A stretch of 64,000 bases of DNA from Botryllus schlosseri (GCA_051294905.1 CM119377.1:7936001-8000000), one strand, 5' to 3'; positions 37,401 through 56,147 are shown, numbered from the stretch's first letter. The notes: generated by a model from the sequence alone, not told the origin. Translations and numbers: made by a program.

Positions 37401-39873
37401 CGACCTTCATATATCCGTTGCGGCTTGTGCGCGTATCCACCACAGTCACATTCTGATGTACGTACAGCATCATACTTTCTTTCGGCATGCACCTGCTGTT
37501 AACGACCGTGCTCGTCATCGTGACTAAACCCATAAAGAACAACTGATGCACGCATTCCATCAGCGAATAAATGTACTTTCTCTTGGCGAGCAGTATGCAC
37601 TTGATGCCGGGAGGCAAGTGCCTGACCAGCATGTGCCGCTTATCGACGTCCTGGAGATACTCTTCCAGCTCGTCTGTGATACGGCAAGGCCTGTGAAACT
37701 GACACAGTATCGACAGCGGCATGATCAGCGCCAGCTCTCCGACTTGCAGCCAGTTTTGCGTGCCACGAGGGTGCAGAGGGGCGGGCGGCAAATATCGCTT
37801 CCACGTGAACTCGGGGTCGTACACTTTCGGAGTATCAGTCTCGGAGGTATCGTCGTCGATCGAGGTGGACTGAGGATGGCCGTACGCCAGATACCATAAA
37901 AACTCGTGCAGGACACGCAGCCTTTTGAACCTCGGCTGAAAATACGGGTTGTCCTGATTCTCTCCCGGCGTTTCGTCCTCTTTCTTACCGACCTCGTGCT
38001 TCTGCCGCTCGACTTTTTTATGATCTTGCCTGGCGATGCGGTTCTCTTCGCGACCGATGTGTTTAAAGCGTGCCTGTTCTATCGCGGACTCGTACTGCGC
38101 GTCGGGGCAGTCCAGCGAGCGTACGAAATGAAAAGTCTCGGTCACATCTTTGTACGTGATCGGCACCTCGTCGTGTTTCAGCACTCCGCTCGCTTTCATC
38201 TTCTCTACGAGCCTGGTGACCGAGTGATGGTCTACGGTAGACGTGTCTCCGTCTTTCTTTCCGGCGGTGTTGATGAGTTTTCTGATGGTCACAAATCCGA
38301 TGACGACTTTTTCCCGGTTCACATACTCCAAAACGACATTGTGACGCTTGATGGTACGCGCGGTCAAATTCGCGTCCCATTTTTTCAAATGAGTCGTCTC
38401 AGCCTGCGCTGTCAAATTTGAGTCGGAACTTAGCTTCTCAAATTTTGATTTCCTGGCGCCTTTCGATTTCACATTCCCGGCGTTATGCGCCGGTTTAGGA
38501 TCTCCTTTATCGCCGTCCTGCGTCGCGTCGTCGACTTTCGTTGACAACACTAGTTCCTGCATTTTCTTTTTCTCCGCTATAAACTCCTTGCTCTTACTGC
38601 AGTTCGCGGATATCGCCTTGGGTATGTACATCCGAATACGCTGTTTGCCTTTGTCAAACAGCACCACGTCAACGACTTTCTTTTGCAGCAAAGACTTCAG
38701 AACGTATCTCGCGTCCAGCGTGCCGAAACCTTTCAGGAACCGTTTCATGTCAGACTGACACACGCCCCTCACCGCGTTCAGCTTTATGAAATCGTACGCC
38801 TGGTTCAAGTACGGTCGGTCAAGCGTGAGTGGCGTTAAGGCGAGATCATCAGTGTCGACAGCAGGCTCTGGGTCTTCTTCTTCGTCTAAATCTTGTTTAT
38901 CGGCAAGGGTGGCTACCATTTCGTACACTGTTCGCATCTGTTTGCCCGGACGCACGCTCGAAATCGTGATTTCGCCCGTTTTTTTCAGCGTCTGATACGA
39001 CGATTTAAACGGTTTGGTGTCCGCGTGAAATTTCTCTTTTAAAACACCGAGGTTCATCGAATGATTCGGAGCGTTTTGCAATTCGTCCAGAATCGCCTTC
39101 ATGACACGGGCGCACAGAGGCAGGGAGGTGCGCTCGTACTTTTTCAAGTTCACCAAAATCTGACTGCACACTCTGCTGTCCGCCGCGACTTTGTACGAGT
39201 GGTGGGACTTCGTCACGAGCCCAAGAACTTGTAGTTTTTTCACGATGGCGTGGAACGCCTTGTGGGGGAAGTTCATTTTTGAAAGTCGCGACATGATCAC
39301 GCCTTCCCATCTAGAACGCGCGATCAACTCCAACACGCAGTAGCAATATTCGCTTATATCCTCCAGAAGCACACGGCTCAAATTTCCCGAAAGCAACGCG
39401 TGTTCTCTCATGGGTCGCGACGCGACGATGACAATCCGCTGTCTGCCATATTTGGCAAAACTCGCGGTTAAATCTAAGGATTGTTCGATGATTTCATCTT
39501 TAATATCGACCCTCTCGTTATAATTCGAGCAACATCCGTGTATGCCCGGATCATCCGTTTTTACTGCGCTGGTGCTGTACACTTCCACTATAGTATCGAG
39601 CTCGTCTGGGGCTGTGGCTACGGGCACTCGTTGCTCATCAATACTTACTGTCCGTTCGAATATCTGTGGTTCGTCACGAGGTTTCGGTATTTGCACGACT
39701 CCAAGCGGCGTTTGATCCAGGATGAATTTCCACAAGTACTCGTGCAGTTTGTCGGAAACCGTGTACGGAAGCTTTGGCTTCCGATGATTCATGCGCAGCC
39801 ATAACGCGGGCAATGTGATGCCTTCCAGGCCCTCAAGCGCGATTTCTTCGACGCAAATTTGTTTGATGTCCAT
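34417..39873 (-). CDS. GTF3C1: General transcription factor 3C polypeptide 1 (TFIIIC220), full length, 1818 aa, uninterrupted CDS
   Basis: N-terminal EEIALEGLEGITLPALWLR; B-block winged-helix region YCVLELIARSRWEG; PRFKRLRVLHEFLWYLAYG; IPGDGRGAGGLDSSLF..LYRNW; K/R-rich linker; then LDDVDLEAIKR..RASFTKAEDALYLLC, WSVVRDIMH and C-terminal ICRPWHNLCG...VYSSPGIT. These match GTF3C1 landmarks in order. Confidence 0.95.
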   Translation of the reverse strand: MDIKQICVEEIALEGLEGITLPALWLRMNHRKPKLPYTVSDKLHEYLWKFILDQTPLGVVQIPKPRDEPQIFERTVSIDEQRVPVATAPDELDTIVEVYSTSAVKTDDPGIHGCCSNYNERVDIKDEIIEQSLDLTASFAKYGRQRIVIVASRPMREHALLSGNLSRVLLEDISEYCYCVLELIARSRWEGVIMSRLSKMNFPHKAFHAIVKKLQVLGLVTKSHHSYKVAADSRVCSQILVNLKKYERTSLPLCARVMKAILDELQNAPNHSMNLGVLKEKFHADTKPFKSSYQTLKKTGEITISSVRPGKQMRTVYEMVATLADKQDLDEEEDPEPAVDTDDLALTPLTLDRPYLNQAYDFIKLNAVRGVCQSDMKRFLKGFGTLDARYVLKSLLQKKVVDVVLFDKGKQRIRMYIPKAISANCSKSKEFIAEKKKMQELVLSTKVDDATQDGDKGDPKPAHNAGNVKSKGARKSKFEKLSSDSNLTAQAETTHLKKWDANLTARTIKRHNVVLEYVNREKVVIGFVTIRKLINTAGKKDGDTSTVDHHSVTRLVEKMKASGVLKHDEVPITYKDVTETFHFVRSLDCPDAQYESAIEQARFKHIGREENRIARQDHKKVERQKHEVGKKEDETPGENQDNPYFQPRFKRLRVLHEFLWYLAYGHPQSTSIDDDTSETDTPKVYDPEFTWKRYLPPAPLHPRGTQNWLQVGELALIMPLSILCQFHRPCRITDELEEYLQDVDKRHMLVRHLPPGIKCILLAKRKYIYSLMECVHQLFFMGLVTMTSTVVNSRCMPKESMMLYVHQNVTVVDTRTSRNGYMKVEEKHYEKIAYKLDDSQVLESFWYKLQAICMQTKLGSYQHMDGEPPKSHMCNTAVKNFVKSASETVQEPRDDGHIPGDGRGAGGLDSSLFSFLYRNWNALQARKMMKSSGTRKKREPAVVEKSRKRPPADVKAAGEPKPKLRKTASKGSEKPPPPVKSRAKPSTTVQTKEIEVVMESNVGRNERVKGGRGVKRKAAPAPPEQPSSSSTLLNLNKVRRRNTKKAGGMLKQGKQRIKYLDDVDLEAIKRRNGRIRASFTKAEDALYLLCHVTTTLLVHLYWKKPHRPRKQIIPWSVVRDIMHSSLPESADKTSYSGGRRTHILMKNPETRICHDISVADIKSDNKFLAEFCPPELDLECNSAKVREVYCKLVEQLKKRFKSQPGLFEDEIPDTSEQVLNRYVPKTIICKSGDIVPRRCYFDDAINDELDVRKSVAENMIYIALAMSDSEFSIFQAYRAFEEFPESTLKDVFSKMKIGGYACRKRHQYRKVPYAMRMYRLTYAHHLSLKAPVPMTVVDEVSQGLEQSGDLEIKTVTTLNHVFLTSYFMTKKTLDIEVDIPDDVVVPEALNSSVFENQFRSMLQGAEKDLLKEVRDSKTNEGDSSTVPPDSLMAAAACILKENFDDNAKTGENSEANSNAADRKLKIAELMRLYHRHPSYSNWLILIKSNSKRSESKFSALNFSSTSDCIVLTPCTIKINNTLTMLDQYCNVDPSERVTTINNLLRSKPVNIERSEAEWAQRNRKVNAHGIVARAIFDSVDSAGYAGISMRGLFESVRFDNKSVNACLDVLFEKLVLYSVGIKEIRVVSYKNVSPWVAKGFRYKDGNRNFQNEILYELKLFQPEKSGEEVKEKKDSKEEAPAALPAEGKRLQSKYEAVEFICRPWHNLCGEISFASAKSLLTSVFMKVYSSPGITQDSICASLSYQRVVIVELLRVLKETGCIQEMSVECPGVKRLFGAPSPAKTVVYYEATDDGLVIVSQWTSVANKMISLSVAATEE

Positions 39874-40034
39874 CGCATAAACACATACCACAGGCCTAAA
39901 GTTCGATAACTGAATTTATCTGTAGATAAATAATCGTTAGAATGTAAACGAACCAATAAAATACAACAATCGTAGAACACAGTGTCCGAAATGACCTGAC
40001 CTGACATACATTTAAATGAAGTGTCGGAATGGAA

Positions 40035-42549: not shown

Positions 42550-42746
42550 CCTATAAGTAACAGAAAAAAGAAATAATAATATAACCACTCAAATATATGA
42601 GAGATACCAAAAGGCAAAAACAGTGAGACTCATCGCAGACTCTGGGAGACTTTCAAATTGAACTGCGCCCAAAATGCTATTTCTCATCTCCAGAACGCCA
42701 GTTGGGATGTCGCACATTGCACCGAAAAATACTCTTTGACGCAGGG

Positions 42747-45700
42747 TCACAAGGGAGTCTTGTGAACCGCTTTAGAAAATCGTTTCTTGTCAGAGTTTAA
42801 CAGAGCGCTCAAAGGCGAAGGTGTGGTGGCGGCCTTACGTTTGACGCCGGGCCGGAGTGCAGCGCGTTTCTTCCTTTTTCGGTTGCTCACAATGACGACT
42901 GTGATTTCTTTCGCCGGAAGACTCGCAGATCGTTCGATTTCAGATTTTCCAGTCGTTTCTACAGTACTTTTCGAATCTTTACCGCTTACCTCCGCCGAAC
43001 CCACACAGTCGATCATTCTCGACTTCACCTCACCGGAAATGCCATCATCTGCCCGCGACCTTCTTTTGCGACCCTTCTCCGCTTTAATCTTGTTCCAGGC
43101 TTGAAGAGTATGCCAATTCTTGGGGAGGAAACTGAAAAAATTTGAATCGAGGCCACCAGCGCCGAGACCGTCGCCAGGTAGGCCTATGCGACCGTCGTCG
43201 CGATGCTCGAGCTGGGTTTCAAGAGAAGATTTCACAAATTCTCTAACTGCAGTGACGCACAGATGGCCATTTGTTTCACCCCCGATGTACTTCAGCGAGC
43301 CGAGCTTGGTCTGCAAGCAGACCTCCTGAAGGTTATCCCAAAACGACTCTAGCACCTGCGAGTTGTCTAATCTATACGCTATCTTCTCGTAATTATTTTC
43401 CTCAACTTTCATATATCCGCTGCAGCTGGCACGCGTATCCACCACAGTCGCGTTCCTATGTACGTACACCATCAGACTTTCCTTCGGCATGTGCCATCCG
43501 TTGCCGATTTTGCATGTCATCGTCACCAGGCCCATGAAGAATAACTGGTGCACGCTTTCGACGAGAGAGTAGATGTACTTTCTCTTGCCGAGAAACAAGC
43601 ACTTAATGCCCGAAGGCAAGTGTCTGACCGGCGTGTGACGCTTGTCAGCATCCTGCAGATACTCTACCAACTCTTCCGTCATCCGCCAAGGTCTGTGAAA
43701 CTGGCACAGTATCGACAGCGGCATGATCGATGCCAGTTCTCCGATTTTCATCCATTTGCGGTCGACGTAAGTGTGGATAGGGGCCGATGGCAGATACCGT
43801 TTCCACGTGAATTCGGGGTCGTAAAGTTTTAACGCGTCTGCTCCCAAGTCACCATCATTAGCTGCATCGGAGAGCGGATGGGCGTATGCCAAATACCACA
43901 AAAACTCGTGTAACACACGCAGCCTTTTGAATCTCGGCTGTAAATTTGGATTTTTAGCCGCTTCTTCCTTCTTACTCATTTCACGCTTCTGCTTCCATGC
44001 CTTCTCCTGAAATTGCCTGGCGATACGACTCTCCTCGCGTGCGATGTACTCAAACCGTGCCTGATCTATCGCGGACTCGTACAGCGCGTCAGGACAGTCC
44101 AACGAGCGTATGAAATCAACAGTCTCGGTCACTTCTTTGTGCGTCAGCTGCACATGGGTGTGTTTCAGCACTCCGTTCGCTTTCATATTCTCGACAAGCC
44201 TGGTTATGGAATTGAGGCACACTTTACATGTGACGCCGTCCTTCTCGTCGGCCGTGGTGATGAGTTTTTTATCTTGGCCAATCCCGTGACTACTTTTTCC
44301 CCGTTGACGTACTCCAGAATGACATTGTGACGCTTGATGGTGCGTGCCGTCAAACCCGCGTCCCGCTTTTTCGAGTGAGCCATGTCTGACTTTGCCGTCA
44401 AATCGACGGAAGGGTTCAATTGATCGAGTCTCGAGTTCTTAGTTCCTTCCGATTTCGAAATCTCGGAGACATTTGCAGGCAGATCTCCGGCATTAGCATC
44501 CCGTGTGCACTCGTCATACTTCGTCGACAGCATAAGTTCCTGCATTTTCTTTTTGACTGCAATAAACTCCTCGCTTTTGCCGCAGTTTGCGGTCACCGTC
44601 TTGGGAAAGTACATCATAATGCGCTGCTTGCCTCGATCGATCAGCACCGCGTCCAGCACTTTCTTATGCACTAACGAGGTGATGATGTATCTCGCTTCCA
44701 ATGCACTGATACCGTCAACAAGCCGGTGCACGTCTGTCAATGACACGCCCCTTGCCACGTTTTGCTTGATAAAATCATACGCCTGGTTCAATATAGGCCT
44801 ATTGAGTGTCAGCGGCATCAAGACGAGTTCGTCGCTGTGTGCAACCGGCCCAGGGTCATCTTGTTTTTCAGCAAGGGTAACTGTCTTTTCGCACCTGCCA
44901 TGCTCAGAAATCGTGATTTCACCAGTTTTTTTCAGCATCTTATACGCAGTCTTAAAGGGTTTCGATCGTGTCTTAAATTTCTCTTTTAAAACGCCAAGGT
45001 TCATGGACTGGTTCCGGGAATTTTGCAATTCCTTCAAAATCCCCTTCCTAGCTCTGGCGTAGAGCGTCAGGGAGGTGCGCTCATACTTTTTCAAGTTCAC
45101 CAAAACCTGAGTGCAAGTGCGGGTAGTTTTGTACGAGTGGTGCGTCTTTGTAACCAGCCCGAGAACGTGCAGCATCTTCACGATGGCCTGGTAGGCCTTG
45201 TTGCGGAAATTCAATTTGGCCAGCCTCGACATGATCACGCCTTCCCACCTGGAACGCGCGATCAACTCCAACACGCAATAACAATGATCGCTTACATGCT
45301 CCAAAAGCACGCGACTAAAATTTCCCGATAGCATCGCGTGTTCTCTATCGGATTGAGACGCGACAATGACTATCTGCTGTCGGCCGTACTTAGCGAAACT
45401 CGTGGTCAAATCTAAGGATTGTTCAACAATCTCATCTTTGATATCAACCCTCTCGTTATAATTCGAGCAAGATCCGCGTATGCCCTCATCATCCGTTTCT
45501 ACCGCACTGCTACTGTACACTTCCACTATTGTATCGAGCTCGTCAGGAGCTGTGGCTATAGGCACTTGTTCCTCATCTAGACTTTTAGTCCGTTCAAATA
45601 GCTGTGGTTCGTCACGAGGTTTCGGTATTTGTACGACTCCAAGTGGCGCGTGATCCAGTATGAATTTCCCCAAGTACTCGTGCAGTTTGTCGGGAACCGT

Positions 45701-45800
45701 GTACGGAAGCTTTGGCTTCCGATGATTCATGCGCAGGCAATGTAATGCCGTCCAGGCCCTCGAGCGCAATTTCTTTGACGCAAATTTGTTTGATGTCCAT
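42747..45800 (-). pseudogene. GTF3C1: GTF3C1 copy 2: C-terminally truncated, with two frameshifts
   Basis: ATG at 45800 (MDIKQICVKEIALEG). An 11-nt deletion near 45736 and a 1-nt deletion in the T run at 44265-44270 split it over the listed ORFs 45612-46088, 44204-45835 and 42747-44222. It ends RFSKAVHKTPL*. Confidence 0.85.
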
Positions 45801-46159
45801 CGCACAAACACATACCACAGGCCTAAATTCAACAACTAAATTTATCTGTATATAAATAATTGTTAGAATGCAAACAAAATAATAAAATTCAACAATCGTT
45901 GAACACAGTGCCAGAAATGACTTGGATTTGGAAGTGGATTGAAACAGGCTCAACAGGGTTATGCAACTCGTCAACAAATATCTTCGATAATCGTGTTCCC
46001 GTATATACGTAACATCGGGAAAATACAGAATAGTAACACTTTTACGAAGTCTGTACCATGAATAACTTAATAGCCAACAGGCCTTCAACTTGGCTACGTT
46101 AAGGATGACAAAATACGGTACCGGTAACCCTAGAGTTACGGTCTTAGCAAACAGGACAT

Positions 46160-46380
46160 GGCACCAATCAGGGACAGAATTACACCTACAGGAGCGAGTC
46201 TCCTATGCGCAGGTAAATTTACACTATTCCACACAAAATCCAGCCTCACCCCAACACCAAAGGGAAATTCAGACTCAAGTCAGGAGAGTTAGAATGAGTT
46301 CGTGTGCCTTCCTGATAGTCTCGAACGCAATCAAATTCCTTCGCACACGACAATATATCATTATTATTCACAGATATCTT
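46160..46380 (-). pseudogene. Second decayed 5' fragment of the 290-aa HNH-like gene
   Basis: Aligns to codons ~1-72 (..FVWNSVNLPAHRRLAPVGVILSLIG versus YVWKSVNLTAHKGLAPVGGMLSLIT). The ATG is lost. Confidence 0.8.
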
Positions 46381-47527
46381 AGGCGGAAATGATGGTACTG
46401 TGGATTTATGCTTGTATCATTGCATAAATTTTAGAAAACAAAGTAGGTAAAGCACTTTTATTGCAAGCGTGCAATTGACCTGAATATAATATGCATAATT
46501 TTGAACAGAACCATAAAAGGACAAGCGGACATTTCCATCATTTCAACTAGAGCCATTCATCACAAAACGACCGATATTTTTTCGTTGTTTACAAAAAATT
46601 TTGAGGATCAAAATGACTGAATACATCCCAATTCAGGTAATCTCTATCCGCAAAAAATACAAATGAAATGATACTCCGGCAGGCAGATCAGATGAGAACC
46701 AGTCCCAACACCATCACCTCGCCAACCCTTATTCTATTCCTGGTAATATCATAAGCGACAAGTCCCTATCATTTTGCATCGAGTCAAATAGTATGATCCG
46801 GTTAACCACCATAATCCAAACGTATTCACATATTATCTCAAGCCACAAGTTTTGAAATCTGCAGTTGAAACAAAGTCACTGTAAATTACCTGACTTGATC
46901 AGAAAGAGCCAAAATGATTACAGTTGAAATAATCGTGGCACAATAGCAGTGATGAGTTATCACAATAGCATCAACATGACAGTACATTGATACATAGTAT
47001 CAGTGATGATTTAATCAGGCAATCAAAACGACATGAGTACCAAAAAATGAATAATATATTGATATTGACATAAACCCGAAGATTTTCAGCTTACATTCGT
47101 CAGGGGCAGGGGTAATCGTCATCAACTAGTAGACTAGTATCAACAATCGTATACAATGTTCTTTCCAATAGTTGCTGACGATAACCCTCGACGAGTTTCA
47201 GTCAAAAATATTTGTGTTTATTTCAATATGAATATGTTCTGCAATTGTGTAGTGAAGTCCTGTACCTCCGACAAGCTCCCCGAGTAACATAAAAAGGTGA
47301 TAATAATAAACACTCAAATACATGAGAGATACCAAAAGGCAGAAACAGTGAGATTCATCGCAGACTCTGGGAAACTTTCGAATTGAAACGCACCGAAAAC
47401 GATATTTCACAATAAAATGCACAAATTCCATAGCGCTGGTTGGGATGTCGCACATTGCACCGAAAAATACTTCAAGTAACTACCGCATTCCTTTGCGTAT
47501 AACTGACGCAGGGTCAAAGCCAGTCCG

Positions 47528-50500
47528 TTATTTACGGTGAATAATTTTAGAAAATCGTTTCTTGTCAGAGTTCAACAGAGAGCTCAAAGGCGATGGTCGG
47601 GTCGCGACTGGCCGGATCGCGAATTTACGCTTGACGCCGGGCCACAGTTCCGCACGTTTCTTTCTTTCTCGGTTGCTCACAGTGACTTTGATTTCTTTCG
47701 CCGGACGTCTCGCAGATCGTCCCGTTCCAGATTTTCCAGTCGTTTCTACAGTACTTTTCGAATCTTTGCCGCTTACCCCCGCGGAACCCACGCAGTCGAT
47801 TATTCTCGACTTCACCTCACCGGGAATGTCGGCATCTGCCCGCAACCGCCTTTTACGGCACTTATCCGCTTTTCTCTTGTTCCAGGCTTGAGGAGTATAC
47901 CAATTCTTGGGGAGGAAACTGAAAAAACTGGAATCAAGGCCACCAGCGCCGAGACCGTCGCCAGGTATGTGACCATCGTCGCGAGGCTCGGGCCGGGTTT
48001 CAAGTGAAGATTTCACAAACTTTCCAACCGCAGTAGTGCACAGATGGCCAGCATTTGTTTCGCACTTCATGTACTGCAACGAGCCGAGCTTAGTCTGCAT
48101 GCAGACCGCTTGCATCTTATCCCAAAACGACTCTAGCGTATGCGCGTCGTCTAATCTATACGCTATCCTCTCGTAATTCTTTTCCGCGACTTTCATAAAT
48201 CCGGCGCAGCTGGTACGCGTATCCACCACAGTCGCGTTCCTATGCACGTACACCATCAGACTTTCCTTCGGCATGTGCCATCCGTTGCCGACTTTGCATG
48301 TCATCGTCACCAGGCCCATGAAAAATAACTGGTGTACGCTTTCGACGAGAGAGTAGATGAACCTTCTCTTGCCGAGAAACAAGCACTTGATGCCCGACGG
48401 TAAGTGTCGGACCGGCGTGTGACTCTTGTCAGCGTCCCGCAGATACCCCTCCAGCTCTTCGGTCATCCGCCAAGGTCTGTGAAACTGACACAGTATCGAC
48501 AGCGGCATGATCGATGCCAGTTCTCCGATTTGCAACCATTTGCGGTCGACGTGTGTGTGGATAGAGGCCGACGGCAGATATCGTTTCCATGTGAACTCGG
48601 AGTTGTAAAGTTTCAGCGCGGCCGCTTCCAAGTTACCGTCATTAGCCGTATCGGAGAGCAGATGGCCGTATGCCAAATACCACAAAAATTCGTGTAAGAC
48701 ACGCAGCCTTTTGAATCTCGGCTGTAAATACGGATTAACGGGATTCTCCTCTATCGCTTCTTCCTTCTTACTCATTTCACGCTTCTGATTCTCCGCCTTT
48801 TCCTGCTCTTGCCTGGCGATACGACCCTCCTCGCGTGCGATGTACTCGAATCGTTCCTGATCTATCGCAGACTCGTACAGCGCGTCGGGACAGTCCAACG
48901 AGCGGAGGAAATGAAAAGTCTCGGTCACTTCTCTGTGCGTGAACTGCACCTCGTCGTGTTTCAGCACTCCGTTCGCATTCATTTTCTTGACAAGCCTGGT
49001 AACGGAAATGGAGTCCACTTTACATGTGACGCCGTCCTTCTCGTCGGCCGTGGTGATGAGTTTTTTGAGCTTGGTCAATCCGGTGACTATTTTTTCCCCG
49101 TTGACGAACTCCAGAATGAGATTGTGACGCTTGATGGCGCGCGCCGTCAAATTCGCGTCCCACTTTTTCAAGTGAGTCATGTCTGACTTTGTCGTCAAAT
49201 CAACGGAAGGGTTCAATTGATCGATTCTCGATTTCTTAGTTTCTTTCAATTTCGAACTCCCGGAGTTATTAGCATGCAAATCTACGGCTGCAGCATCCTG
49301 CGTGCACTCGTCATACTTCGTCGACAGCACAAGTTCCTGCATTTTCTTTTTGACCGCAATAAACTCCTCGCTTTTGCCGCAGTTACCGGAAACTGTCTTG
49401 GGAAAGTACATCATAACGCGCTGCTTGCCTCGATCGATCAGCACCGCGTCCAGGACGTCCTTATGGACCAACGAGGTGATGATGTATCTCGCTTCCAACG
49501 CACTGATATCTTTGACAAGCCGATGCATGTCTGCCTGGGACACCCCCCTCGCCGCGTTTTGCTTGATAAAATCGTACGCCTGGTTCAATATCGGTTGATT
49601 GAGTGTCAGCGGCACCAAGACGAGATCATCGCTGTGTACGACCGGTCCCGGGTCGTCTTGTTTTTCAGCAAGGGCGGCTGTCCATTCGCACACTGACCGT
49701 CTCTGCTTTGAAATCGTGATTTCACCCGTTTTTGTCAGCATCCTATACGCTGACCTAAACTGTATCAATCGTGTCTTAAATTTCTCTTTCAAAACGCCAA
49801 GGTTCATAGACTGGTCAGGAGCGTTTTGCAATTCCGTCAAAATCCCCTTCATAACTCTGGCGTTGAGCGCCAGGGAGGTGCGCTCGTACTTTTTCAAGTT
49901 CACCAAAATCTGAGTGCACGTGCGGTTAGTTTTGTAAGTGTGGTGGGACTTAGTGACCAGCCCGACAACCTGCAACGTCTTTACGATGGCCTGGTAGGCC
50001 TTATTGCGGAAATTCAATTTGGCCAGCCGCGACTGGATCACGCCTTCCCACCTGGAACGCGCGATCAACTCCAACACGCAATAGCAATGATCGCTTACAT
50101 GCTCCAAAAGCACGCGACTAATATTTCCCGATAGCATCGCGTGTTCTCTAACGGATTGAGACGCCACAACGACAATCCGTTTTCGGCCGTACTTGGCAAA
50201 ACTCGTGGTTAAATCTAAGGATTGTTCAATGATATCATCTTTGATATCGACCCTCTCGCTATAATCCGAGCAACATCCGCGTATGCCCTCCTCATCCGTT
50301 TGTACCGCACTGTTACTATACACTTCCACTAGTGTATCGAGCTCGTCTGGGGCTGTGGCTGTAGGCACTTCTTCCTCATCTAGACTTTTAGTCCGCTCGA
50401 ATACCTGTGGTTCCTCACGAGGTCTCGGTATTTGTACGATTCTCAGCGGCGTGTGATCCAGGATGAATCTCCACAGGTACTCGCGCAGTTTATCGCAAAC

Positions 50501-50614
50501 TTCATACGGAAGTTTTGGTTTCCGACGATTCATGCGCAGCCATAACGTAGGCAACGTGATCCCGTCCAGACCTTCGAGCGCGATTTCTTCGACGCAAATT
50601 CGTCTGATGTCCAT
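47528..50614 (-). CDS. GTF3C1: GTF3C1 copy 3: open reading frame of 1028 aa, N-terminal half only
   Basis: Uninterrupted ATG-to-TAA ORF collinear with aa 1 to ~1035 of copy 1, roughly 70-75% identical by eye over the N-terminal 250 aa. It ends in the basic linker with a novel tail SDKKRFSKIIHRK*. Confidence 0.85.
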   Translation of the reverse strand: MDIRRICVEEIALEGLDGITLPTLWLRMNRRKPKLPYEVCDKLREYLWRFILDHTPLRIVQIPRPREEPQVFERTKSLDEEEVPTATAPDELDTLVEVYSNSAVQTDEEGIRGCCSDYSERVDIKDDIIEQSLDLTTSFAKYGRKRIVVVASQSVREHAMLSGNISRVLLEHVSDHCYCVLELIARSRWEGVIQSRLAKLNFRNKAYQAIVKTLQVVGLVTKSHHTYKTNRTCTQILVNLKKYERTSLALNARVMKGILTELQNAPDQSMNLGVLKEKFKTRLIQFRSAYRMLTKTGEITISKQRRSVCEWTAALAEKQDDPGPVVHSDDLVLVPLTLNQPILNQAYDFIKQNAARGVSQADMHRLVKDISALEARYIITSLVHKDVLDAVLIDRGKQRVMMYFPKTVSGNCGKSEEFIAVKKKMQELVLSTKYDECTQDAAAVDLHANNSGSSKLKETKKSRIDQLNPSVDLTTKSDMTHLKKWDANLTARAIKRHNLILEFVNGEKIVTGLTKLKKLITTADEKDGVTCKVDSISVTRLVKKMNANGVLKHDEVQFTHREVTETFHFLRSLDCPDALYESAIDQERFEYIAREEGRIARQEQEKAENQKREMSKKEEAIEENPVNPYLQPRFKRLRVLHEFLWYLAYGHLLSDTANDGNLEAAALKLYNSEFTWKRYLPSASIHTHVDRKWLQIGELASIMPLSILCQFHRPWRMTEELEGYLRDADKSHTPVRHLPSGIKCLFLGKRRFIYSLVESVHQLFFMGLVTMTCKVGNGWHMPKESLMVYVHRNATVVDTRTSCAGFMKVAEKNYERIAYRLDDAHTLESFWDKMQAVCMQTKLGSLQYMKCETNAGHLCTTAVGKFVKSSLETRPEPRDDGHIPGDGLGAGGLDSSFFSFLPKNWYTPQAWNKRKADKCRKRRLRADADIPGEVKSRIIDCVGSAGVSGKDSKSTVETTGKSGTGRSARRPAKEIKVTVSNRERKKRAELWPGVKRKFAIRPVATRPSPLSSLLNSDKKRFSKIIHRK

Positions 50615-52335
50615 CACGGAAACGCATGAATGGTTTAACGCAAGTCTAACTAGGGTAGCTCAATTTTATCTGCAGATATAGAAGCATCGAGATGTAAATG
50701 ACACGAAGAAATACAACGACAATCGTTGAACACAGAGCACAATAGGACCTGGCATACATTTATACATAGTGTCGAGGTGGATTGAAACAGGCATAACATG
50801 ATGACGGTATCTCTGTGTATGCAAAATATAGGAAAATGCACACAGGGCGATATAAACGTTTCCGCAATGTGTGCATTACAGATATCGTTTACCAGTAGGC
50901 AGACTATAGATGCTTGTGTGAAGTTTGTAATAAAAACAATGTCGGGATAAACCATGCTCAGTGCAATTGTGTATTCATCTTCTGAATGATGTCAGTTTGG
51001 TAAAGATCAATAATCCCGCCTGATGAAATGATGTGAAAAAGATTATTAACACAATATATATAAAGAGGTATGGCGTGTAAATATAGCAACAATATATGTC
51101 GGCATTTATGTAAGTATTCTATTTGGCCCTTTTTCAAGAATCGCCCATTTTGATTAAGGTCGTAGTATCGTTAACGGAAGATAGATATCCTTTGAAGAGA
51201 ACAACTACATCAAGACACTCGACTATAGGTCGAATTAGCCACAAATCTGAATTCTGCAGTCAATAGCATGGAATCAGCTAGAATACAGATATAGTCCACA
51301 ACAGTAACAATAGTCCACAACAGTAACAATTTGATTTGATATCGACGCAGAAGGTGCAAAACAATTAACCGTCATATCTCTGGTGGTAAGTGTCGAAGTG
51401 ACATAATGGAAATGATTGTACTCTGACAAATGCATCCAGTAAAAGACAGAGTCAGAAAAGTCAATAGAATGAAACACTTGACAAGCAAAATTTCAACTTG
51501 AGTCCTTTGGACCGGGCTCAGCAGTAGCAAGTGATGATAAGAGCATAAACTTTGCAACAAGGCTTTATGAATTACAGTGGTTCTCAAACATTACAATCCT
51601 ATCGGTTCTAGACCGATGTAGCCATAAATCTGCCTCAGGCCGAGATGATAGGGTCAAAGTACTAACGGAATTATATTTCAACCTAGTTCAATCGGGTATG
51701 TTCCAGCAATAAAAATCAGTGCAACACTGGGATTCTTCCCGAAAATTACAGCCAACAACGACTGAAGCTTTAAAAGGTCTCATTAAACTCTGATACCACA
51801 AAGCGCAATGAAACATAACTCCAAAACTTCACAATTATCAGGTTCAATTCTCACTTGAGGAATGATATATTGACATAACAGTGATTCTATTTGGTCTGAC
51901 ATGATGCGAAATATTTAGTAATGCATAACATTATGTCATATACATTATGTGTGGATACACTGGCAAAAAAATAATCACACAAGCACTTGTGTTGACAGAT
52001 ATCACATTTTTTACATAACTGCATACCAAAGGCGATGTTCAACGAATAACATTGTAAATATGATAACACAAACACACAAAATCGGCATACGCGCCCATAC
52101 AAAATCATCACGGCACATGTTGACCTATCAACTTCGAAGTAGAATTGTTGCGCCTTTGGAATAATATTGGGTTCAACCAAAGGCCCTACAGCGGGACGAG
52201 TCATGAAAGGAATTGCAGCAGAACCCATTTTTATCAAACTGTGGAGCGTTAAAAGGATTGGCCGCATAATAACAAAAATACCATAAGAGAAAAATATGTC
52301 AGGTAGCCTCAATAAGCAAATGACAACACAATAAC

Positions 52336-52711: not shown

Positions 52712-55402
52712 TCAACTTCGATCAGTGGGAGTAAAACCGTGGTTCGAACAGAACAAGGGGATGATCTCGATGCAGTTGAGATATTGGCAAATTTTACAGT
52801 CGGTCAGCGGGCTGATGTAGAAAAACACAATCAAGAGCGCAAATATCGCGCAGAACACCAAAAAGCATGTGATCACTTGAATTCGCTTCCTCCGACGGTC
52901 AAAGTCGCTGAACGTGATGTAAGGAAGGAACACAAACGACAGGAGCAGCCCGGACAGGAACCCGAAAATGTGCGCAAAGTTATCGATCCAAGGAAGCAAC
53001 CCAAACACAAACAGAACCAGAGCGATCACGGACAGTTTTCCCAGGGCTTTGCCAGGCGACTTCAACAGCTGCCAGCTTTGCAACACTTCCACAAAGAGAC
53101 AAGCCAAAATACCGAAATGGGACCCGGCCGGCCCGACGTCGGCGCGGTACGGCAAGAAGATAGCGGAAGCCAGGTTTCCGCTGATCCCGCTGAGCATGTA
53201 GATCAATGATATCCTCAGCCAGCCGGCTAATTTCTCCATATCCTTGAGCACGGTCATTTGGAACGCGACTGATATGGCACAGTGGACCACGCCCGCGTGT
53301 AGCAAAATGGAAAGCCACAGACGATAGATCTGATCGGGCGACTGCGCTAGCCTGAACTCGATGAGCCCGCAAGTGTCCTGCATGCAATTCACTTGAGAAC
53401 ACAGAGTTGCTTCAGAGTGGAAGACACCTCTTTTATTATCGCAGTATTCCTTTGTTACAATTTCGCACTTTGCCTCCTGCCCGATACAACAAGGGTGACC
53501 CACCAGATCGCAGGACATATGCTGCAGCGTGGTGTCGCTCGTATTTTTCGCGTTGGCGCAGATCGGCCACTTTGTGATGTCATCGGGCCATTCATCCGCT
53601 TGACCGAGCACGTAATCCGCACACAAGTTTGGATCTTGACCACACACAGAACCCGACTGACGGATTTCGACTTGACCGTCCGGGTTTGTGTACCCGGGCG
53701 GGTCGAATTCGGGGTCCGGCCATTTGATCCACGTAGCGAACAAAGAGCTGCACTCGTCTTCGTTGGTTTGAATGCATCCGGAATTGTCTTTTCGCACGCA
53801 GCAAGCCGACTGATTCTCGGCCTTCATTTCTTCCAGCAGCAAAGAATGAAGTTTCGGGTCTTGCCGCATGCACGGCGAGTACTTGGCGCCCAGATGAATC
53901 AAGTCTTTTGTACGCGGGCCAATCCAGAAATTTTGCGGCTCCGAAAACACTTCGCTCACTCTGGACAGGGACTTTTTGGTGGTCGTGAAGCTCTCTTGAA
54001 AATTCGCGAAACCGATCGGAGCCACACCGTAGACAGCCAGCGATATGATGCACACGACAATGTGCACGAACGATATCCAGTACGAAAAATACGGCCTGTG
54101 ATCGTCGAAAGTGTTTAGCTGGTTTTCGACGTAGCTGTTCAAGCGCTTCCTAGTCAGACGCCTGTTAAGCCAGTTGCCCACCAAGCCTTTTCCATATTCT
54201 CGCTTTTCTTTACGACGAAAAGCCACCGAAAGCATCCTCTTCACGCCTGGCTTACGGGCGTCTTTTTGAGCCTGCGCCGGTTTTTCGGGGTACTGCTGTC
54301 GCGGCTGTATGGCGGGGCAGGATTCTTCAACAGGCGACGCGACGATAAAAACCTCATCCGGAAACGACTCTCCTTCTAAAATCGTGGGCATCTGGTCCCG
54401 CATAAACTCTGTCGTGTCACCTTCCTCCGCCTCCGCAGGGACAGCCTCTTCGGCCAAACTCTCCATCGGATAGCTTCCCCGTTCCATCGACTTTCCGACC
54501 AAATCATTCATGATGGACGTACCTTTCACCATCGCGCTCACAACTTTCCAGCTCATCTTGGCCACGGAGTCCTTGCGGTTCCGGTAATCTTGTCTTCGCA
54601 AAGTGGTTGTAGAGAACTGCGCACCGTATCTGGAGGCGTTACCGCCTAGCGATCGGTTTCCCGGGGTGACGGGTGTTCGCGGCGGGGTGCTGATAGCCAA
54701 CGGGCCCCCGGCCATCGAATTGCCTGCGTTCATCGAATAACTTTCGGATATATCCGGGGTGCCAATATGGCGTTTTCCGCCACGTCTCGCTAAAGGATCA
54801 AAAATTTGAGGGGGAGCTTGCGGCGATCCGGAAAAACTATGAAACGTTTCTCTTTCTTCTCTCTCTTCCATTTCTTGTTGCGCTTGCGGTTTCAATTTCC
54901 CATATTTCATGCTGCAGTATCTCAGATGACGCAACCGCCATTTGTTCTGGTCTTCGTCGCAGTTTTTCCCGATCCCAACAAAACTCTCGGTGGCTTCCAT
55001 CATACGACGCGACCCGCTTCTAAGCACGGCCGCACGCTGCAAGAGAGAATTTTGTCTCTGAAACGTAGACCGTTTATGCCTTGAGCCGTCGGTGTTTCGT
55101 TTAGAACCGTGCATCGTGGCACTGAAGCTTCGGTGGTACGCTTTCTGCGCGGACACACTCTGAACGTGAGCGGACCGCGGCATCGGCACGGGATCTGGCG
55201 ATATTGTGTCTTCCGGTATGCGTGATGCCAGTCTGGCTTTCGGTATGTCCAGCTTCAAGTTATGTATGTTTCTTGACGGCCTACGTTCAGAACCTGGATC
55301 TGGGTCTGACAGGGGCTCTGTGACGGGTGCTGCCGCACTGCCAGTGTTATCTTCTGTGTCGTCAGACCGGCCAGGGTTTCCATCTTGATCATCTTCCATC
55401 AT
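52712..55402 (-). CDS. RHBDF1: Inactive rhomboid protein (iRhom, RHBDF1/2-like), ~896 aa, uninterrupted CDS
   Basis: Long Ser/Arg-rich cytosolic N-terminus, then HRPYFSYWISFVH and QNFWIGP...LIHLGAKYSPCMRQD. Cys-rich iRhom homology domain (SACCVRKDNSGCIQT, SGSVCGQDP, GHPCCIG). Rhomboid core QIYRLWLSILLHAG, DMEKLAGWLRISLIY and GPAGSHFG (the GP signature of iRhoms), then WIDNFAHIFG. Likely start MMEDDQ at 55402. Confidence 0.96.
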   Translation of the reverse strand: MMEDDQDGNPGRSDDTEDNTGSAAAPVTEPLSDPDPGSERRPSRNIHNLKLDIPKARLASRIPEDTISPDPVPMPRSAHVQSVSAQKAYHRSFSATMHGSKRNTDGSRHKRSTFQRQNSLLQRAAVLRSGSRRMMEATESFVGIGKNCDEDQNKWRLRHLRYCSMKYGKLKPQAQQEMEEREERETFHSFSGSPQAPPQIFDPLARRGGKRHIGTPDISESYSMNAGNSMAGGPLAISTPPRTPVTPGNRSLGGNASRYGAQFSTTTLRRQDYRNRKDSVAKMSWKVVSAMVKGTSIMNDLVGKSMERGSYPMESLAEEAVPAEAEEGDTTEFMRDQMPTILEGESFPDEVFIVASPVEESCPAIQPRQQYPEKPAQAQKDARKPGVKRMLSVAFRRKEKREYGKGLVGNWLNRRLTRKRLNSYVENQLNTFDDHRPYFSYWISFVHIVVCIISLAVYGVAPIGFANFQESFTTTKKSLSRVSEVFSEPQNFWIGPRTKDLIHLGAKYSPCMRQDPKLHSLLLEEMKAENQSACCVRKDNSGCIQTNEDECSSLFATWIKWPDPEFDPPGYTNPDGQVEIRQSGSVCGQDPNLCADYVLGQADEWPDDITKWPICANAKNTSDTTLQHMSCDLVGHPCCIGQEAKCEIVTKEYCDNKRGVFHSEATLCSQVNCMQDTCGLIEFRLAQSPDQIYRLWLSILLHAGVVHCAISVAFQMTVLKDMEKLAGWLRISLIYMLSGISGNLASAIFLPYRADVGPAGSHFGILACLFVEVLQSWQLLKSPGKALGKLSVIALVLFVFGLLPWIDNFAHIFGFLSGLLLSFVFLPYITFSDFDRRRKRIQVITCFLVFCAIFALLIVFFYISPLTDCKICQYLNCIEIIPLFCSNHGFTPTDRS

Positions 55403-55945
55403 GAGTTCAATTTCAACTAGGCAGCTATTAAAAATACCGAAAATCTGAATAGAAAATGTGTTTAATGATATATTAGGCACCCGGCACCGTATTCAGTAAG
55501 AGCCTGTATGATCAACTGACTTCTGAAATTGAACATCAAACAGATAGCCTAATATAGATCAAAATGTGATACAAAAATCGTGATAAAGCGGACTATATAT
55601 TTTCCCACATGCCATGTTGATTGTAATGACCGTTATTTCTAGGAGATCCTACCACCAAATTCAATCGCCATGTTTGACACAGGGTTATCATGGCATTTGA
55701 AAACAATTCGAAAACATTGCAGCAAACAATACGTTTATATTGCAAATTGATCCCACTCGAAGCTTTTCGAGTGGCCCTTTTCAGAAGTGACCGCCAGTAA
55801 ATGAGGGTAAACAAGCTCGAAATATTGAAAGAATTTTGTCGTTGTGATGTAATAATGACAAGTACACAGAGTCGTGAACGGGAGTAAACAACGCACGGTT
55901 ACAGTACAACGCACACAAAATCAGCTGTACTATCTATCTCGTCCT

Positions 55946-56147
55946 GAAGAAATGCGCGTTCGATGAAAAGCTATGTATCATGTCGAGCAAATAGTTCAAA
56001 AGAGTGAAATAAATGACACATATTCACCTTCAGCCTCAAGAGAGTAGAAGAAATGTGCGTTCGATGAAAAGTTATATATCATGTCGGACAAATAGTTCAA
56101 AAGCGTGAAATAAATGACACATATTCACTTTCAGCCTCAAGAGAGTA
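55946..56147. repeat. Direct tandem duplication, two units of ~101 bp
   Basis: GAAGAAATG(C/T)GCGTTCGATGAAAAG...CAGCCTCAAGAGAGTA is repeated with few mismatches. Confidence 0.9.

What the first reader, a model, noticed from the sequence alone, without database searches (positions are those of the whole stretch)
47528..50614. Open, diverged half-length GTF3C1 paralog: a candidate tauB-only TFIIIC subunit
Seen: a 1028-aa ORF without stops or frameshifts over 3.1 kb, despite roughly a quarter of residues differing from the full-length copy. It keeps the B-block winged-helix region, the RLRVLHEFLWYLAYG segment and the PGDG.GAGGLDS..F..NW motif. It stops inside the K/R-rich linker and lacks the ~780 C-terminal residues. 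Known: the N-terminal part of TFIIIC220/tau138 belongs to the B-box-binding tauB module, while its C-terminal part joins tauA, which places TFIIIB, via a long flexible linker. TFIIIC also binds B-boxes without recruiting Pol III (ETC/insulator sites). Inference: the break falls at the module boundary. The paralog could assemble a tauB-only complex that occupies B-boxes without activating Pol III, acting as a dedicated insulator, a SINE/tDNA repressor or a tissue-specific competitor.
Basis: partly seen in the sequence, partly recalled or inferred. Interest (0 to 1): 0.85.

Follow-up and report, generated by a model that had tools for sequence, protein, structure and literature searches.

The report
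Half-length TFIIIC220 gene kept by selection
A sea squirt carries, beside its only full-length gene for the large tRNA-gene-binding subunit of TFIIIC, a shortened copy that keeps the DNA-anchoring half and lacks the polymerase-recruiting half; selection has kept it intact, but what it does is untested.

Summary
A 1028-codon open frame lies on the minus strand at 47528-50614. It is an intronless N-terminal copy of the genome's only full-length GTF3C1 gene (34417-39873).

It is not a retrocopy. A roughly 7-kb unit was duplicated in tandem and then lost 2.8 kb internally. That removed everything from 10-19 residues before the first tauA-half domain. A second duplication gave copy 2 (42747-45800), which now has two frameshifts.

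Copy 3 is under purifying selection:
- dN/dS is 0.26 against the parent and about 0.5 on its own branch (P=3e-4).
- It has no stops where neutral drift predicts about 12.
- Listed polymorphisms are 11 synonymous and 10 nonsynonymous.
- It has no frame-breaking variants in contigs of two other runs (other samples and studies).

The model matches the human tauB TFIIIC220 structure, and conserved residues are kept about as well as in the parent. The eWH domain shows no constraint, and its base-contacting lysine is Ile.

Expression is probable but not proven. Contigs guessed to be RNA, from two studies, cover the whole gene. Two raw RNA-seq samples showed no reads.

The tauB-only mechanism fits the structure but is untested. 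No equivalent was found in other species or in the papers searched.

The parts
47528..50614 (-). Copy 3: intact half-length GTF3C1/TFIIIC220 paralog, 1028 codons plus TAA. Predicted domains: WH1-WH4 at residues 1-410, eWH plus a long helix at 490-620, a folded middle ('linker') domain at 633-915, and a disordered K/R-rich tail at 919-1028.
   Evidence: ORF and translation; Pfam; AlphaFold2 model; Foldseek top match 8cli_A, human tauB-DNA, E 3.5e-36; dN/dS.
50615..50671 (-). Predicted 5' end of the copy 3 mRNA. A pyrimidine tract is followed by a CAG acceptor-like site (AG at 50671-50670), 55 nt before the ATG. An out-of-frame upstream ATG lies at 50627-50625.
   Evidence: Sequence. The acceptor-like site and the upstream ATG are conserved upstream of all three copies. 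A 3817-nt contig of run X2 that continues upstream toward/into the iRhom gene ends at 50669, and depth drops sharply there in X1 and X2. No spliced-leader read was seen, so the 5' end is inferred.
50758..50764 (-). TATAAAT motif about 145 nt upstream of the copy 3 ATG. It could be the gene's own promoter element.
   Evidence: Sequence. Copy 1 has TTTAAAT at the aligned place and copy 2 has lost the motif. Not tested.
47200..47527 (-). Probable 3' UTR of copy 3, with AATAAA at 47222-47217.
   Evidence: Sequence. An X2 contig at depth 16.7 runs from the coding region through the stop to about 47205. The part at 47459-47291 is homologous to the distal 3' flank of copy 1, 33955-33801.
42747..45800 (-). 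Copy 2: sister half-length copy, 85% nucleotide identity to copy 3, with the same truncation. It is broken by an 11-bp deletion at about 45736 and a 1-bp deletion in an A run at about 44270. There are no stops in the homologous frames.
   Evidence: tblastn; blastn; indel list and alignment. Its branch dN/dS is 0.33-0.37. Runs that hold 0.40-0.50 of copy 3's 31-mers hold only 0.09-0.29 of copy 2's.
34417..39873 (-). Copy 1: the full-length, intronless GTF3C1 gene (1818 aa). It is the only full-length copy in the 495-Mb genome and the parent of the half copies.
   Evidence: ORF; Pfam. Whole-genome searches with the protein and with PF04182 find only this locus. It aligns to human GTF3C1 chains 8cli-8cll along its whole length, including the C-terminal part.
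46151..46581 (-). Degenerate duplicate of the 5' region of the downstream HNH-like gene. It marks the boundary of the tandem unit between copy 3 and copy 2. A second such fragment lies at 40077-40410, between copy 2 and copy 1.
   Evidence: Self-blastn: 32864-33304 matches 46151-46581 (70%) and 40077-40410 (71%); 40047-41091 matches 46205-47277 (76%).
52712..55480 (-). Upstream neighbour: an intronless iRhom-like gene (922-aa ORF). Its transcript appears to end right at the copy 3 acceptor-like site, so the two may form an operon-like pair.
   Evidence: Pfam Rhomboid and iRhom1-2_N. The 3817-nt X2 contig begins at 50669 and its length would carry it upstream into the iRhom ORF; only its first 432 letters were laid.
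32216..33088 (-). Downstream neighbour of copy 1: a 290-aa ORF that another reader noted as HNH-like. The GTF3C1-then-this-gene order appears conserved in the nearest relative found.
   Evidence: ORF; note s1-300901. In the relative's contig, an intronless 1858-aa GTF3C1 is followed by a 292-aa gene.

Best explanation
Copy 3 is a lineage-specific, protein-coding, truncated paralog of the largest TFIIIC subunit (TFIIIC220/GTF3C1).

Origin (shown): a roughly 7-kb unit, made of the intronless GTF3C1 gene plus the start of the next gene, was duplicated in tandem. One copy lost 2.8 kb internally. This removed the whole tauA-integrated C-terminal half, the old stop and the proximal 3' UTR, and it left a new stop a few codons after the junction. 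The truncated unit was then duplicated again. Copy 2 later acquired two frameshifts, while copy 3 stayed intact.

Selection (shown): copy 3 evolves about 2.5-3 times faster than the parent but remains under purifying selection, between copies and, on the partial variant list, within the species.

Expression (probable): it is transcribed collinearly, with no splice seen. The transcript seems to start at an acceptor-like site 55 nt before the ATG, just where the upstream iRhom transcript ends. That is the layout of a tunicate operon.

Mechanism (inferred): the protein has the WH1-WH4 and eWH array that forms tauB with TFIIIC110 and TFIIIC90 and reads the B-box. It also has the conserved middle domain and a basic, NLS-like tail. 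It has none of the domains that dock tauA (TFIIIC102/63/35). It should therefore occupy B-box-type sites, or sequester the tauB partners, without placing TFIIIB and Pol III. That would make it a built-in competitor, roadblock or architectural factor. Its eWH domain has drifted, so its DNA preference may differ from the parent's.
For: Structure of the locus:
- Self-blastn and junction mapping show the tandem units and one shared deletion, copy 1 36764 to 33955.
- Only this locus in the genome matches GTF3C1.
- The tree is (relative,(c1,(c2,c3))) with 100/100 support.

Selection:
- Pairwise dN/dS between copy 1 and copy 3 is 0.25-0.30 at dS about 0.9. Between copy 2 and copy 3 it is 0.39-0.48 at dS about 0.22-0.26, by four methods.
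- The copy 3 branch has 53 synonymous and 99 nonsynonymous changes, omega about 0.5, binomial P=2.8e-4.
- Constraint is clearest in WH1-WH2 (0.39, P=0.002) and the middle domain (0.50, P=0.03).
- About 12 stops are expected under neutrality and none is observed.
- Of 21 listed coding variants in contigs of two other runs (other samples and studies), 11 are synonymous and 10 nonsynonymous. With the site counts (676 synonymous, 2354 nonsynonymous), this gives pN/pS of about 0.26. No frame-breaking indel lies in the CDS. An alternative allele still ends 7 codons after the junction.

Protein:
- Pfam domains are above cut-off.
- The AF2 model's top match is the human tauB-DNA TFIIIC220 chain 8cli_A, E 3.5e-36. 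Yeast tauB 9gc3_A also matches.
- Of 144 columns at least 80% conserved in 40 metazoan GTF3C1 proteins, copy 3 keeps 106 and the parent keeps 111.
- The break falls 10-19 residues before the first tauA-half block. Module limits are from PMC11811891.

Expression:
- Fifteen runs from 7 studies hold 0.40-0.50 of copy 3's 31-mers. At the roughly 2.5% divergence seen, that corresponds to nearly full coverage.
- X1 and X2 show transcript-like uneven depth: about 31 on the iRhom 3' part, 3-17 on copy 3, and about 0 on copy 2's 5' end. X2 shows a 3' bias and a contig running through the stop into the UTR.

Precedent:
- Poliovirus 3C cleaves TFIIIC-alpha (GTF3C1), the box B-binding subunit. This lowers TFIIIC activity and inhibits Pol III transcription (review PMC4471892, citing Clark 1991 and Shen 1996).
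- TFIIIC can act as a roadblock and binds ETC sites without Pol III (PMC12409998).
Against: - No run on record as RNA shows the transcript. Two raw RNA-seq runs, sampled at 12.9 and 10 million reads, gave zero reads on copy 3. The neighbouring iRhom 3' region was also almost unread in them, so this negative is weak.
- The RNA nature of X1 and X2 is the tool's guess. X1 also covers some intergenic stretches.
- The paralog evolves 2.4-2.9 times faster than the parent.
- The eWH domain shows no constraint on copy 3's branch (3 synonymous, 14 nonsynonymous changes; omega 1.3; small numbers).
- The equivalent of human base-contacting K657 is Ile. It is His in the parent and in the relative, and Lys in other tunicates.
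- The sister copy 2 is broken, so the truncated form is dispensable in at least one copy.
- No half-length relative was found in any other species.
- Binding to TFIIIC110/90 and to DNA was not tested.
Confidence: 0.55

Rival explanations
1. Copy 3 is a non-functional duplicate on its way to decay, like copy 2. The open frame and dN/dS below 1 are left over from a recent functional past, or come from gene conversion with functional DNA.
For: - The sister copy 2 carries two frameshifts.
- The paralog's protein rate is 2.4-2.9 times the parent's.
- The eWH domain and the 413-489 loop evolve at omega of 1 or more on copy 3's branch.
- Two raw RNA-seq samples gave no reads.
- Synonymous divergence from the parent is lower in the first 250 codons (0.40-0.55) than elsewhere (0.8-1.3). 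This could reflect past conversion.
Against: - Omega on copy 3's own branch is about 0.5, with P=2.8e-4.
- There are zero stops where about 12 are expected, and no frameshift in 3.1 kb.
- Listed polymorphisms give pN/pS of about 0.26, and the frame is intact in contigs of two other runs (other samples and studies).
- The only possible functional conversion donor, copy 1, is at dS about 0.9 over most of the length. Conversion therefore cannot explain the constraint since the copy 2/copy 3 split.
- Conserved columns are kept nearly as well as in the parent, 106 against 111 of 144.
Confidence: 0.2
2. Copy 3 is not a stand-alone gene. It is an alternative giant 5' exon that is spliced onto the C-terminal half of copy 1, giving a full-length TFIIIC220 isoform with a different tauB half.
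For: All three copies lie on the same strand in one array. Other readers describe this genome as rich in polycistronic, trans-spliced units. The idea would explain why a tauB half alone is conserved.
Against: - The X2 contig with the highest depth in the gene (16.7) runs collinearly through the stop codon and about 300 nt of 3' UTR, to an AATAAA.
- No joint leaves the coding region. The only joints reported are indel-type replacements near or after the stop.
- Copy 1 is one uninterrupted ORF, and no sign of an internal acceptor was seen at the homologous point.
Confidence: 0.05
3. Copy 3 is functional but no longer acts through TFIIIC. It has become a neofunctionalised winged-helix DNA- or chromatin-binding protein, with new sequence specificity or new partners. 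Examples would be binding SINE or transposon sequences, or acting through the conserved middle domain.
For: - The eWH domain changes fast (3 synonymous, 14 nonsynonymous), and the K657-equivalent is Ile.
- Constraint is strongest in WH1-WH2 and in the middle domain, whose role is unknown.
- Protein evolution accelerated after the truncation; the stem branch is 0.28 against 0.14 for copy 1.
Against: - Nearly all residues conserved across metazoan GTF3C1 are retained, including the R401 equivalent and the G-K-Q-R turn of WH4.
- The predicted WH array still superposes on human and yeast tauB.
- Numbers per domain are small.
Confidence: 0.15

Closest known systems
Full-length TFIIIC220 / GTF3C1 (yeast tau138), B-block-binding subunit of TFIIIC (human structures 8CLI-8CLL; PMC11811891)
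   Same: It has the same N-terminal architecture: WH1, WH2 (B-block domain), WH3, WH4 and eWH. It also has the conserved middle region (RLRVLHEFLWYL..., PGDG.GAGGLDS) and the basic stretch. Pfam domains are above cut-off, and the model's best structural match is the tauB chain.
   Different: It lacks the whole C-terminal half (homeobox-like domain and WH5-WH8), which in human is an integral part of tauA. It therefore cannot tether tauA and TFIIIB. It evolves 2.4-2.9 times faster than the parent, and the eWH base-contacting Lys is replaced by Ile.
TFIIIC-alpha (GTF3C1) cleaved by poliovirus 3C protease (Clark 1991 and Shen 1996, as cited in review PMC4471892)
   Same: In both cases the B-box-binding subunit is severed. 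In the viral case this lowers TFIIIC activity and inhibits Pol III transcription, according to the review.
   Different: That product arises by proteolysis during infection. As I recall it, not checked here because Shen 1996 could not be opened, the fragment is about 83 kDa and still binds DNA. Here the truncation is written in a separate gene, keeps the linker domain as well, and is maintained by selection in an animal genome.
Extra-TFIIIC (ETC) sites and TFIIIC as barrier or roadblock (PMC3395662, PMC12409998)
   Same: These show the proposed outcome: B-box occupancy without TFIIIB or Pol III, with insulator, barrier or repressive effects.
   Different: At ETC sites the factor described is TFIIIC itself, and the outcome is attributed to the DNA site. 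Here the uncoupling would be set by a dedicated subunit variant. This is not tested.
Processed (retro)pseudogene or retrogene of GTF3C1
   Same: It is intronless and is a partial copy of the parent.
   Different: The parent itself is intronless and lies adjacent. The duplicated unit includes upstream and downstream non-coding DNA and a fragment of the neighbouring gene. The truncation is an internal deletion that keeps the distal 3' flank, which points to DNA-level tandem duplication.

Membership tests
GTF3C1 / TFIIIC220 / tau138 family | N-terminal WH domain, B-block-binding WH domain and extended WH domain recognised by the family profiles | tested here: met
   PF23704 scores 39.0 bits (cut-off 27), PF04182 scores 38.6 (cut-off 22) and PF24101 scores 39.7 (cut-off 30).
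GTF3C1 / TFIIIC220 / tau138 family | Fold of the N-terminal WH array as in solved tauB structures | tested here: met
   The AF2 model has mean pLDDT 72.8, with the domains at 80-95. Foldseek gives 8cli_A (human tauB-DNA) at E 3.5e-36 over 606 columns, and 9gc3_A (yeast tauB) at E 1.2e-14.
GTF3C1 / TFIIIC220 / tau138 family | Base-contacting residues of the B-box readout (human R401, R422, K657; PMC11811891) | tested here: inconclusive
   The R401 equivalent is kept. R422 is Lys, as in the parent, Styela, Phallusia and amphioxus. K657 is Ile in copy 3, His in the parent and the nearest relative, and Lys in other tunicates.
GTF3C1 / TFIIIC220 / tau138 family | C-terminal half (homeobox-like domain, WH5-WH8) that is part of tauA and links tauA to tauB | tested here: not met
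   Homology ends at parent residue about 1038, and the first tauA-half block starts at parent residue 1057. Nothing downstream of copy 3 matches it.
GTF3C1 / TFIIIC220 / tau138 family | Assembly with TFIIIC110 and TFIIIC90, and high-affinity B-box binding | not tested
   No complex prediction was run. GTF3C4 was found only as a split gene elsewhere in the genome, and its zinc-finger part was not found. This needs a bench test.
Non-functional duplicate (pseudogene) | Stops or frameshifts, dN/dS near 1, loss-of-function alleles | tested here: not met
   Copy 3 has no stop or frameshift. Its branch omega is about 0.5 (P=2.8e-4). Listed variants give pN/pS of about 0.26. No frame-breaking indel was seen in X1 or X2 contigs. 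Copy 2, in contrast, has two frameshifts.
Processed retrocopy | Intronless copy of an intron-containing parent, ending in a poly(A) tract, dispersed, without the parent's flanking DNA | tested here: not met
   The parent is intronless and adjacent. Flanking homology extends about 160 nt upstream of the ATG and into the distal 3' flank. The unit also carries a fragment of the neighbouring gene.

The most novel reading that the evidence does not exclude
Copy 3 encodes a dedicated tauB-only factor. With TFIIIC110 and TFIIIC90 it would occupy B-box-type sites (tDNAs, SINE-like repeats, ETC-type sites) without recruiting TFIIIB or Pol III. It would then be a genetically encoded separation of TFIIIC's DNA-anchoring and polymerase-recruiting functions, used as a regulated Pol III brake or as a chromatin-boundary factor. 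I found no such natural paralog described in the papers searched.
Probability: 0.3. Interest if true: 0.8.

Novelty: new variant of a known kind. Interest (0 to 1): 0.55.

Why it matters
TFIIIC has two roles: recruiting Pol III, and binding DNA as an architectural or barrier factor without Pol III. In current models the same six-subunit complex does both, and it is unclear how the two roles are separated. A natural, selectively maintained gene that encodes only the B-box-anchoring half, plus the poorly understood conserved linker domain, would be a ready-made separation-of-function allele. It could test directly whether tauB occupancy alone gives insulation or repression, and what the linker domain does. 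If it proves to be a young duplicate with a marginal role, it is still a clean example of a truncated paralog born by tandem duplication plus internal deletion in an intron-poor, operon-rich tunicate genome.

Tried and rejected
- Retrocopy origin was rejected. The parent is intronless and adjacent, and flanking DNA was co-duplicated.
- A second, intron-containing GTF3C1 elsewhere in the genome was not found, either with the protein or with PF04182.
- Splicing of copy 3 onto downstream exons found no support. No joints leave the CDS, and a contig runs through the stop.
- Raw RNA-seq runs X19 and X23 gave zero reads on copy 3. Every read laid in these runs matched the stretch only partly, and the iRhom 3' region was barely covered, so the negative is weak. 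The single read-laying run could not include copy 1 as a positive control.
- The RNA nature of runs X1-X9 could not be confirmed; it is the tool's guess. I argue for it only from uneven depth and from the small total size of the contigs.
- A search for half-length relatives in other species found none. Only full-length GTF3C1 proteins came back, plus a few 715-1791-aa arthropod and unnamed GTF3C1 entries at 24-36% identity. The nearest relative is 49% identical to the parent. Tunicates are thinly sampled.
- The relative's contig shows no called gene in the 1.8 kb upstream of its GTF3C1. This is too short to exclude a half copy.
- The zinc-finger part of TFIIIC90 (PF12660) was not found in the genome search, and the control genomes did not ring either. 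The complex prediction was therefore not attempted.
- Shen et al. 1996 (PMC231413) could not be opened. The precedent is cited through a review.
- Papers on a natural tauB-only paralog or a truncated TFIIIC220 were not found.
- There are no tRNA genes in the window.
Full report
**1. What is there**

The minus strand carries an open frame from the ATG at 50614-50612 to the TAA at 47530-47528. It has 1028 codons and no stop or frameshift. Pfam finds the three GTF3C1 domains above their curated cut-offs: WH_GTF3C1_N, B-block_TFIIIC and eWH_GTF3C1.

The window has no N. It holds three GTF3C1-like copies, all on the minus strand:
- Copy 1 (34417-39873) is a full-length, intronless gene of 1818 aa.
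- Copy 2 (42747-45800) is half-length and read in three frame pieces.
- Copy 3 is the ORF of the finding.

Whole-genome searches with the copy 1 protein and with the B-block family find nothing outside this locus in the 495-Mb assembly. Copy 1 is therefore the animal's only full-length GTF3C1.

Earlier notes of the scan identify the genome as a sea squirt. They describe many intronless genes in operon-like arrays. An intronless gene is thus ordinary in this genome.

**2.

- The named motifs are present.
- Homology to copy 1 ends at about copy 1 residue 1038, inside a K/R-rich stretch.
- About 780 residues of copy 1 have no counterpart.

**3. How it arose**

Self-comparison shows three tandem units.
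- Copy 2 and copy 3 are 85% identical over 3.36 kb, flanks included. Each is about 75% identical to copy 1 over 2.9 kb.
- Upstream homology among the three runs about 160 nt beyond the ATG.
- Upstream of copy 1 and of copy 2 lie degenerate copies of the 5' region of the gene that follows copy 1. These are at 40077-40410 and 46151-46581, and both match 32864-33304. The duplicated unit was therefore GTF3C1 plus the start of its downstream neighbour.
- In both half copies, homology to copy 1 stops at copy 1 position 36764 and resumes at 33955, in copy 1's distal 3' flank. One 2.8-kb internal deletion, made before the copy 2/copy 3 duplication, created the truncated gene and a new stop a few codons later.

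This is DNA-level duplication, not retroposition.

A maximum-likelihood tree gives (nearest relative,(c1,(c2,c3))) with 100/100 support. Branch lengths are c1 0.14, the stem of the half copies 0.28, c2 0.11 and c3 0.12.

The nearest relative in the protein database is 49% identical to copy 1. It is also intronless and is followed by a 292-aa gene, as copy 1 is here. No half-length homologue turned up in any other species. Tunicates are thinly sampled, so this is weak evidence of absence.

**4. Is copy 3 kept by selection?**

Pairwise dN/dS, by four methods:
- Copy 1 against copy 3: 0.25-0.30, at dS of about 0.9.
- Copy 2 against copy 3: 0.39-0.48, at dS of about 0.22-0.26.

Branch estimates, polarised with copy 1:
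- The copy 3 branch has 53 synonymous and 99 nonsynonymous changes. Omega is about 0.5, with binomial P=2.8e-4 against neutrality.
- The copy 2 branch has 64 and 82, omega about 0.37.

At copy 3's own synonymous divergence, neutral simulation predicts about 12 stops. None of 5000 replicates stayed open.

With the relative as outgroup, copy 3 has 115 unique amino-acid changes against 48 in copy 1 (P=1.6e-7). Constraint is therefore relaxed, but it is present.

| Region (copy 3 branch) | Omega | Note |
|---|---|---|
| WH1-WH2 | 0.39 | P=0.002 |
| WH3-WH4 | 0.66 | not significant |
| eWH plus helix | 1.27 | 3 synonymous, 14 nonsynonymous |
| Middle domain | 0.50 | P=0.03 |
| Basic tail | 0.46 | P=0.076 |

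Within the species, contigs from runs of two other studies differ from the window by about 2.5%.
- Of the 21 coding differences listed, 11 are synonymous and 10 nonsynonymous. With the site counts this gives pN/pS of about 0.26. The tool's variant list was partial (66 variants not shown).
- No indel falls in the coding region.
- One allele replaces the last codons by a copy-2-like tail that still stops after 7 codons.

**5. Copy 2**

Relative to copy 3, copy 2 has an 11-bp deletion at codon 23 or so and a 1-bp deletion in an A run at codon 517 or so. Otherwise it has no stop in the homologous frames. It looks recently disabled.

The runs that hold 0.40-0.50 of copy 3's 31-mers hold only 0.09-0.29 of copy 2's. 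Four likely DNA runs hold 0.72-0.83 of copy 2's.

**6. The protein**

An AlphaFold2 model built on 42 sequences has mean pLDDT 72.8. It predicts:
- WH1-WH4 at residues 1-410;
- a disordered loop;
- eWH plus a long helix at 490-620;
- a well-folded middle domain at 633-915, with blocks up to pLDDT 95;
- a disordered basic tail at 919-1028.

The best structural matches are the TFIIIC220 chain of the human tauB-DNA complex (8cli_A, E 3.5e-36, 606 columns) and yeast tauB (9gc3_A).

In human TFIIIC220, residues 1-716 belong to tauB. A linker of about 550 residues follows, and the C-terminal half is part of tauA (PMC11811891). In a 42-sequence alignment, copy 3's last homologous residue maps to about primate residue 1237. 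The first conserved block of the C-terminal half starts at primate residue 1247, which is parent residue 1057. The break is thus at the linker/tauA boundary. Copy 3 keeps tauB plus the whole linker, including its conserved, predicted-folded part.

Of 144 columns at least 80% conserved in 40 other metazoan GTF3C1 proteins, copy 1 keeps 111, copy 3 keeps 106 and copy 2 keeps 105.

Base-contacting residues:
- R401 is kept.
- R422 is Lys, as in the parent and in other invertebrate chordates.
- K657 is Ile in copy 3, His in the parent and the relative, and Lys in Styela and Phallusia.

**7. Expression**

Two raw RNA-seq runs, sampled at 12.9 and 10 million reads, gave no read on copy 3. Every read laid from these runs matched the stretch only partly, and the neighbouring iRhom 3' region was almost unread. 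The negative is therefore weak.

Contigs of two older runs, whose RNA nature is only the tool's guess, cover copy 3 nearly end to end.
- Depth is uneven in a transcript-like way: about 31 on the iRhom 3' part, 3-17 on copy 3 and about 0 on the 5' end of copy 2.
- X2 shows a 3' bias.
- One contig runs through the stop into about 300 nt of 3' UTR, which carries AATAAA at 47222-47217.
- A 3817-nt X2 contig ends at 50669, and its length would carry it upstream into the iRhom ORF, although only its first 432 letters were laid. Position 50669 is directly after a pyrimidine-tract CAG that is conserved upstream of all three copies, 55 nt before the ATG.

This is the layout of a tunicate operon, in which the upstream mRNA ends at the downstream gene's trans-splice acceptor. 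That description rests on my own knowledge of Ciona operons. No spliced-leader read was seen here.

**8. Mechanism**

Shown:
- The origin by tandem duplication and internal deletion.
- Purifying selection on the truncated ORF.
- Retention of the tauB-type fold and of the conserved residues.
- Absence of the tauA half.

Probable:
- Transcription as a collinear mRNA.

Inferred:
- The protein enters the nucleus, because its tail is basic and NLS-like.
- It binds TFIIIC110/90 and B-box-type DNA.
- Lacking the tauA tether, it cannot place TFIIIB and Pol III. It would therefore compete with, block or replace full TFIIIC at some sites.

Precedents are poliovirus 3C cleavage of TFIIIC-alpha, which inhibits Pol III transcription (review PMC4471892), and TFIIIC acting as a roadblock and binding ETC sites without Pol III (PMC12409998, PMC3395662). 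The unconstrained eWH domain and the Ile at the K657 position leave room for an altered DNA preference.

**9. Verdict**

The functional claims remain hypotheses.

It is a new variant of a known kind, is lineage-specific as far as the data reach, and is of moderate interest until expression and binding are shown.

Noticed in passing
window 2785-3825 (-), 22246-23085 (+), 32216-33088 (-), 52712-55480 (-): Several unrelated genes in this window are complete single ORFs without introns. They are a phosphatidylinositol transfer protein (IP_trans), a carbon-nitrogen hydrolase, the 290-aa HNH-like ORF and a 922-aa iRhom. Other readers' notes describe this genome as rich in intronless, operon-like arrays.
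   Followed up: partly
window 50719-50735 (-), with aligned sites upstream of copy 1 (about 39975-39995) and copy 2: A motif, CTGTGTTCAACGATTGT, is almost invariant about 105-120 nt upstream of the ATG of all three GTF3C1 copies. The surrounding upstream DNA is far less conserved. It could be a shared regulatory element. It is only a weak match to a B-box.
   Followed up: no
window 50625-50627 (-), and the aligned positions upstream of copies 1 and 2: An out-of-frame upstream ATG lies 13 nt before the main ATG and is conserved in all three copies. In copy 3 it opens an overlapping uORF of about 40 codons. It may dampen translation of the whole family.
   Followed up: no
window 42747-45800 (-): Copy 2's two frame-breaking deletions (11 bp and 1 bp) add up to 12 bp, so the original frame is restored after the second one. 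There is no stop in any homologous frame, and its branch dN/dS (0.33-0.37) is lower than copy 3's. Either it died very recently, or the 1-bp deletion in an A run is an assembly error or polymorphism.
   Followed up: partly
window 49865-50614 (-), first 250 codons of copy 3 against copy 1: Synonymous divergence from copy 1 is 0.40-0.55 in the first 250 codons, against 0.8-1.3 further on. This suggests past gene conversion at the 5' end, or extra constraint on synonymous sites there.
   Followed up: no
window 47870-48718 (-), copy 3 residues 633-915: In the human cryo-EM work this part of TFIIIC220 is called a disordered, roughly 550-residue linker. Here it contains a strongly conserved region that AlphaFold2 predicts as folded, with pLDDT up to 95 (motifs RLRVLHEFLWYL and PGDG.GAGGLDS). 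It is under constraint in the half copy. Its function seems undescribed.
   Followed up: partly
window 47471-47546: In run X1, copy 3's last codons and stop region are replaced by 37 letters resembling copy 2's 3' end. This gives an alternative C-terminal tail...FSKVVHKTGL-stop. It is either an allele made by copy 2/copy 3 conversion or a chimeric contig.
   Followed up: partly
window 40879-41060, 47045-47246, 56974-57056: Short related segments, some in inverted orientation and one with a 31-bp inverted repeat at 97% (40882-40912 against 41019-41049), look like a MITE-type element. They show high, repeat-like depth in the runs laid. Unit 2 also carries about 1.5 kb (41091-42556) that is absent from unit 3.
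   Followed up: no
window 55946-56149: A 103-bp direct tandem duplication at 93% identity lies just upstream of the iRhom ORF.
   Followed up: no
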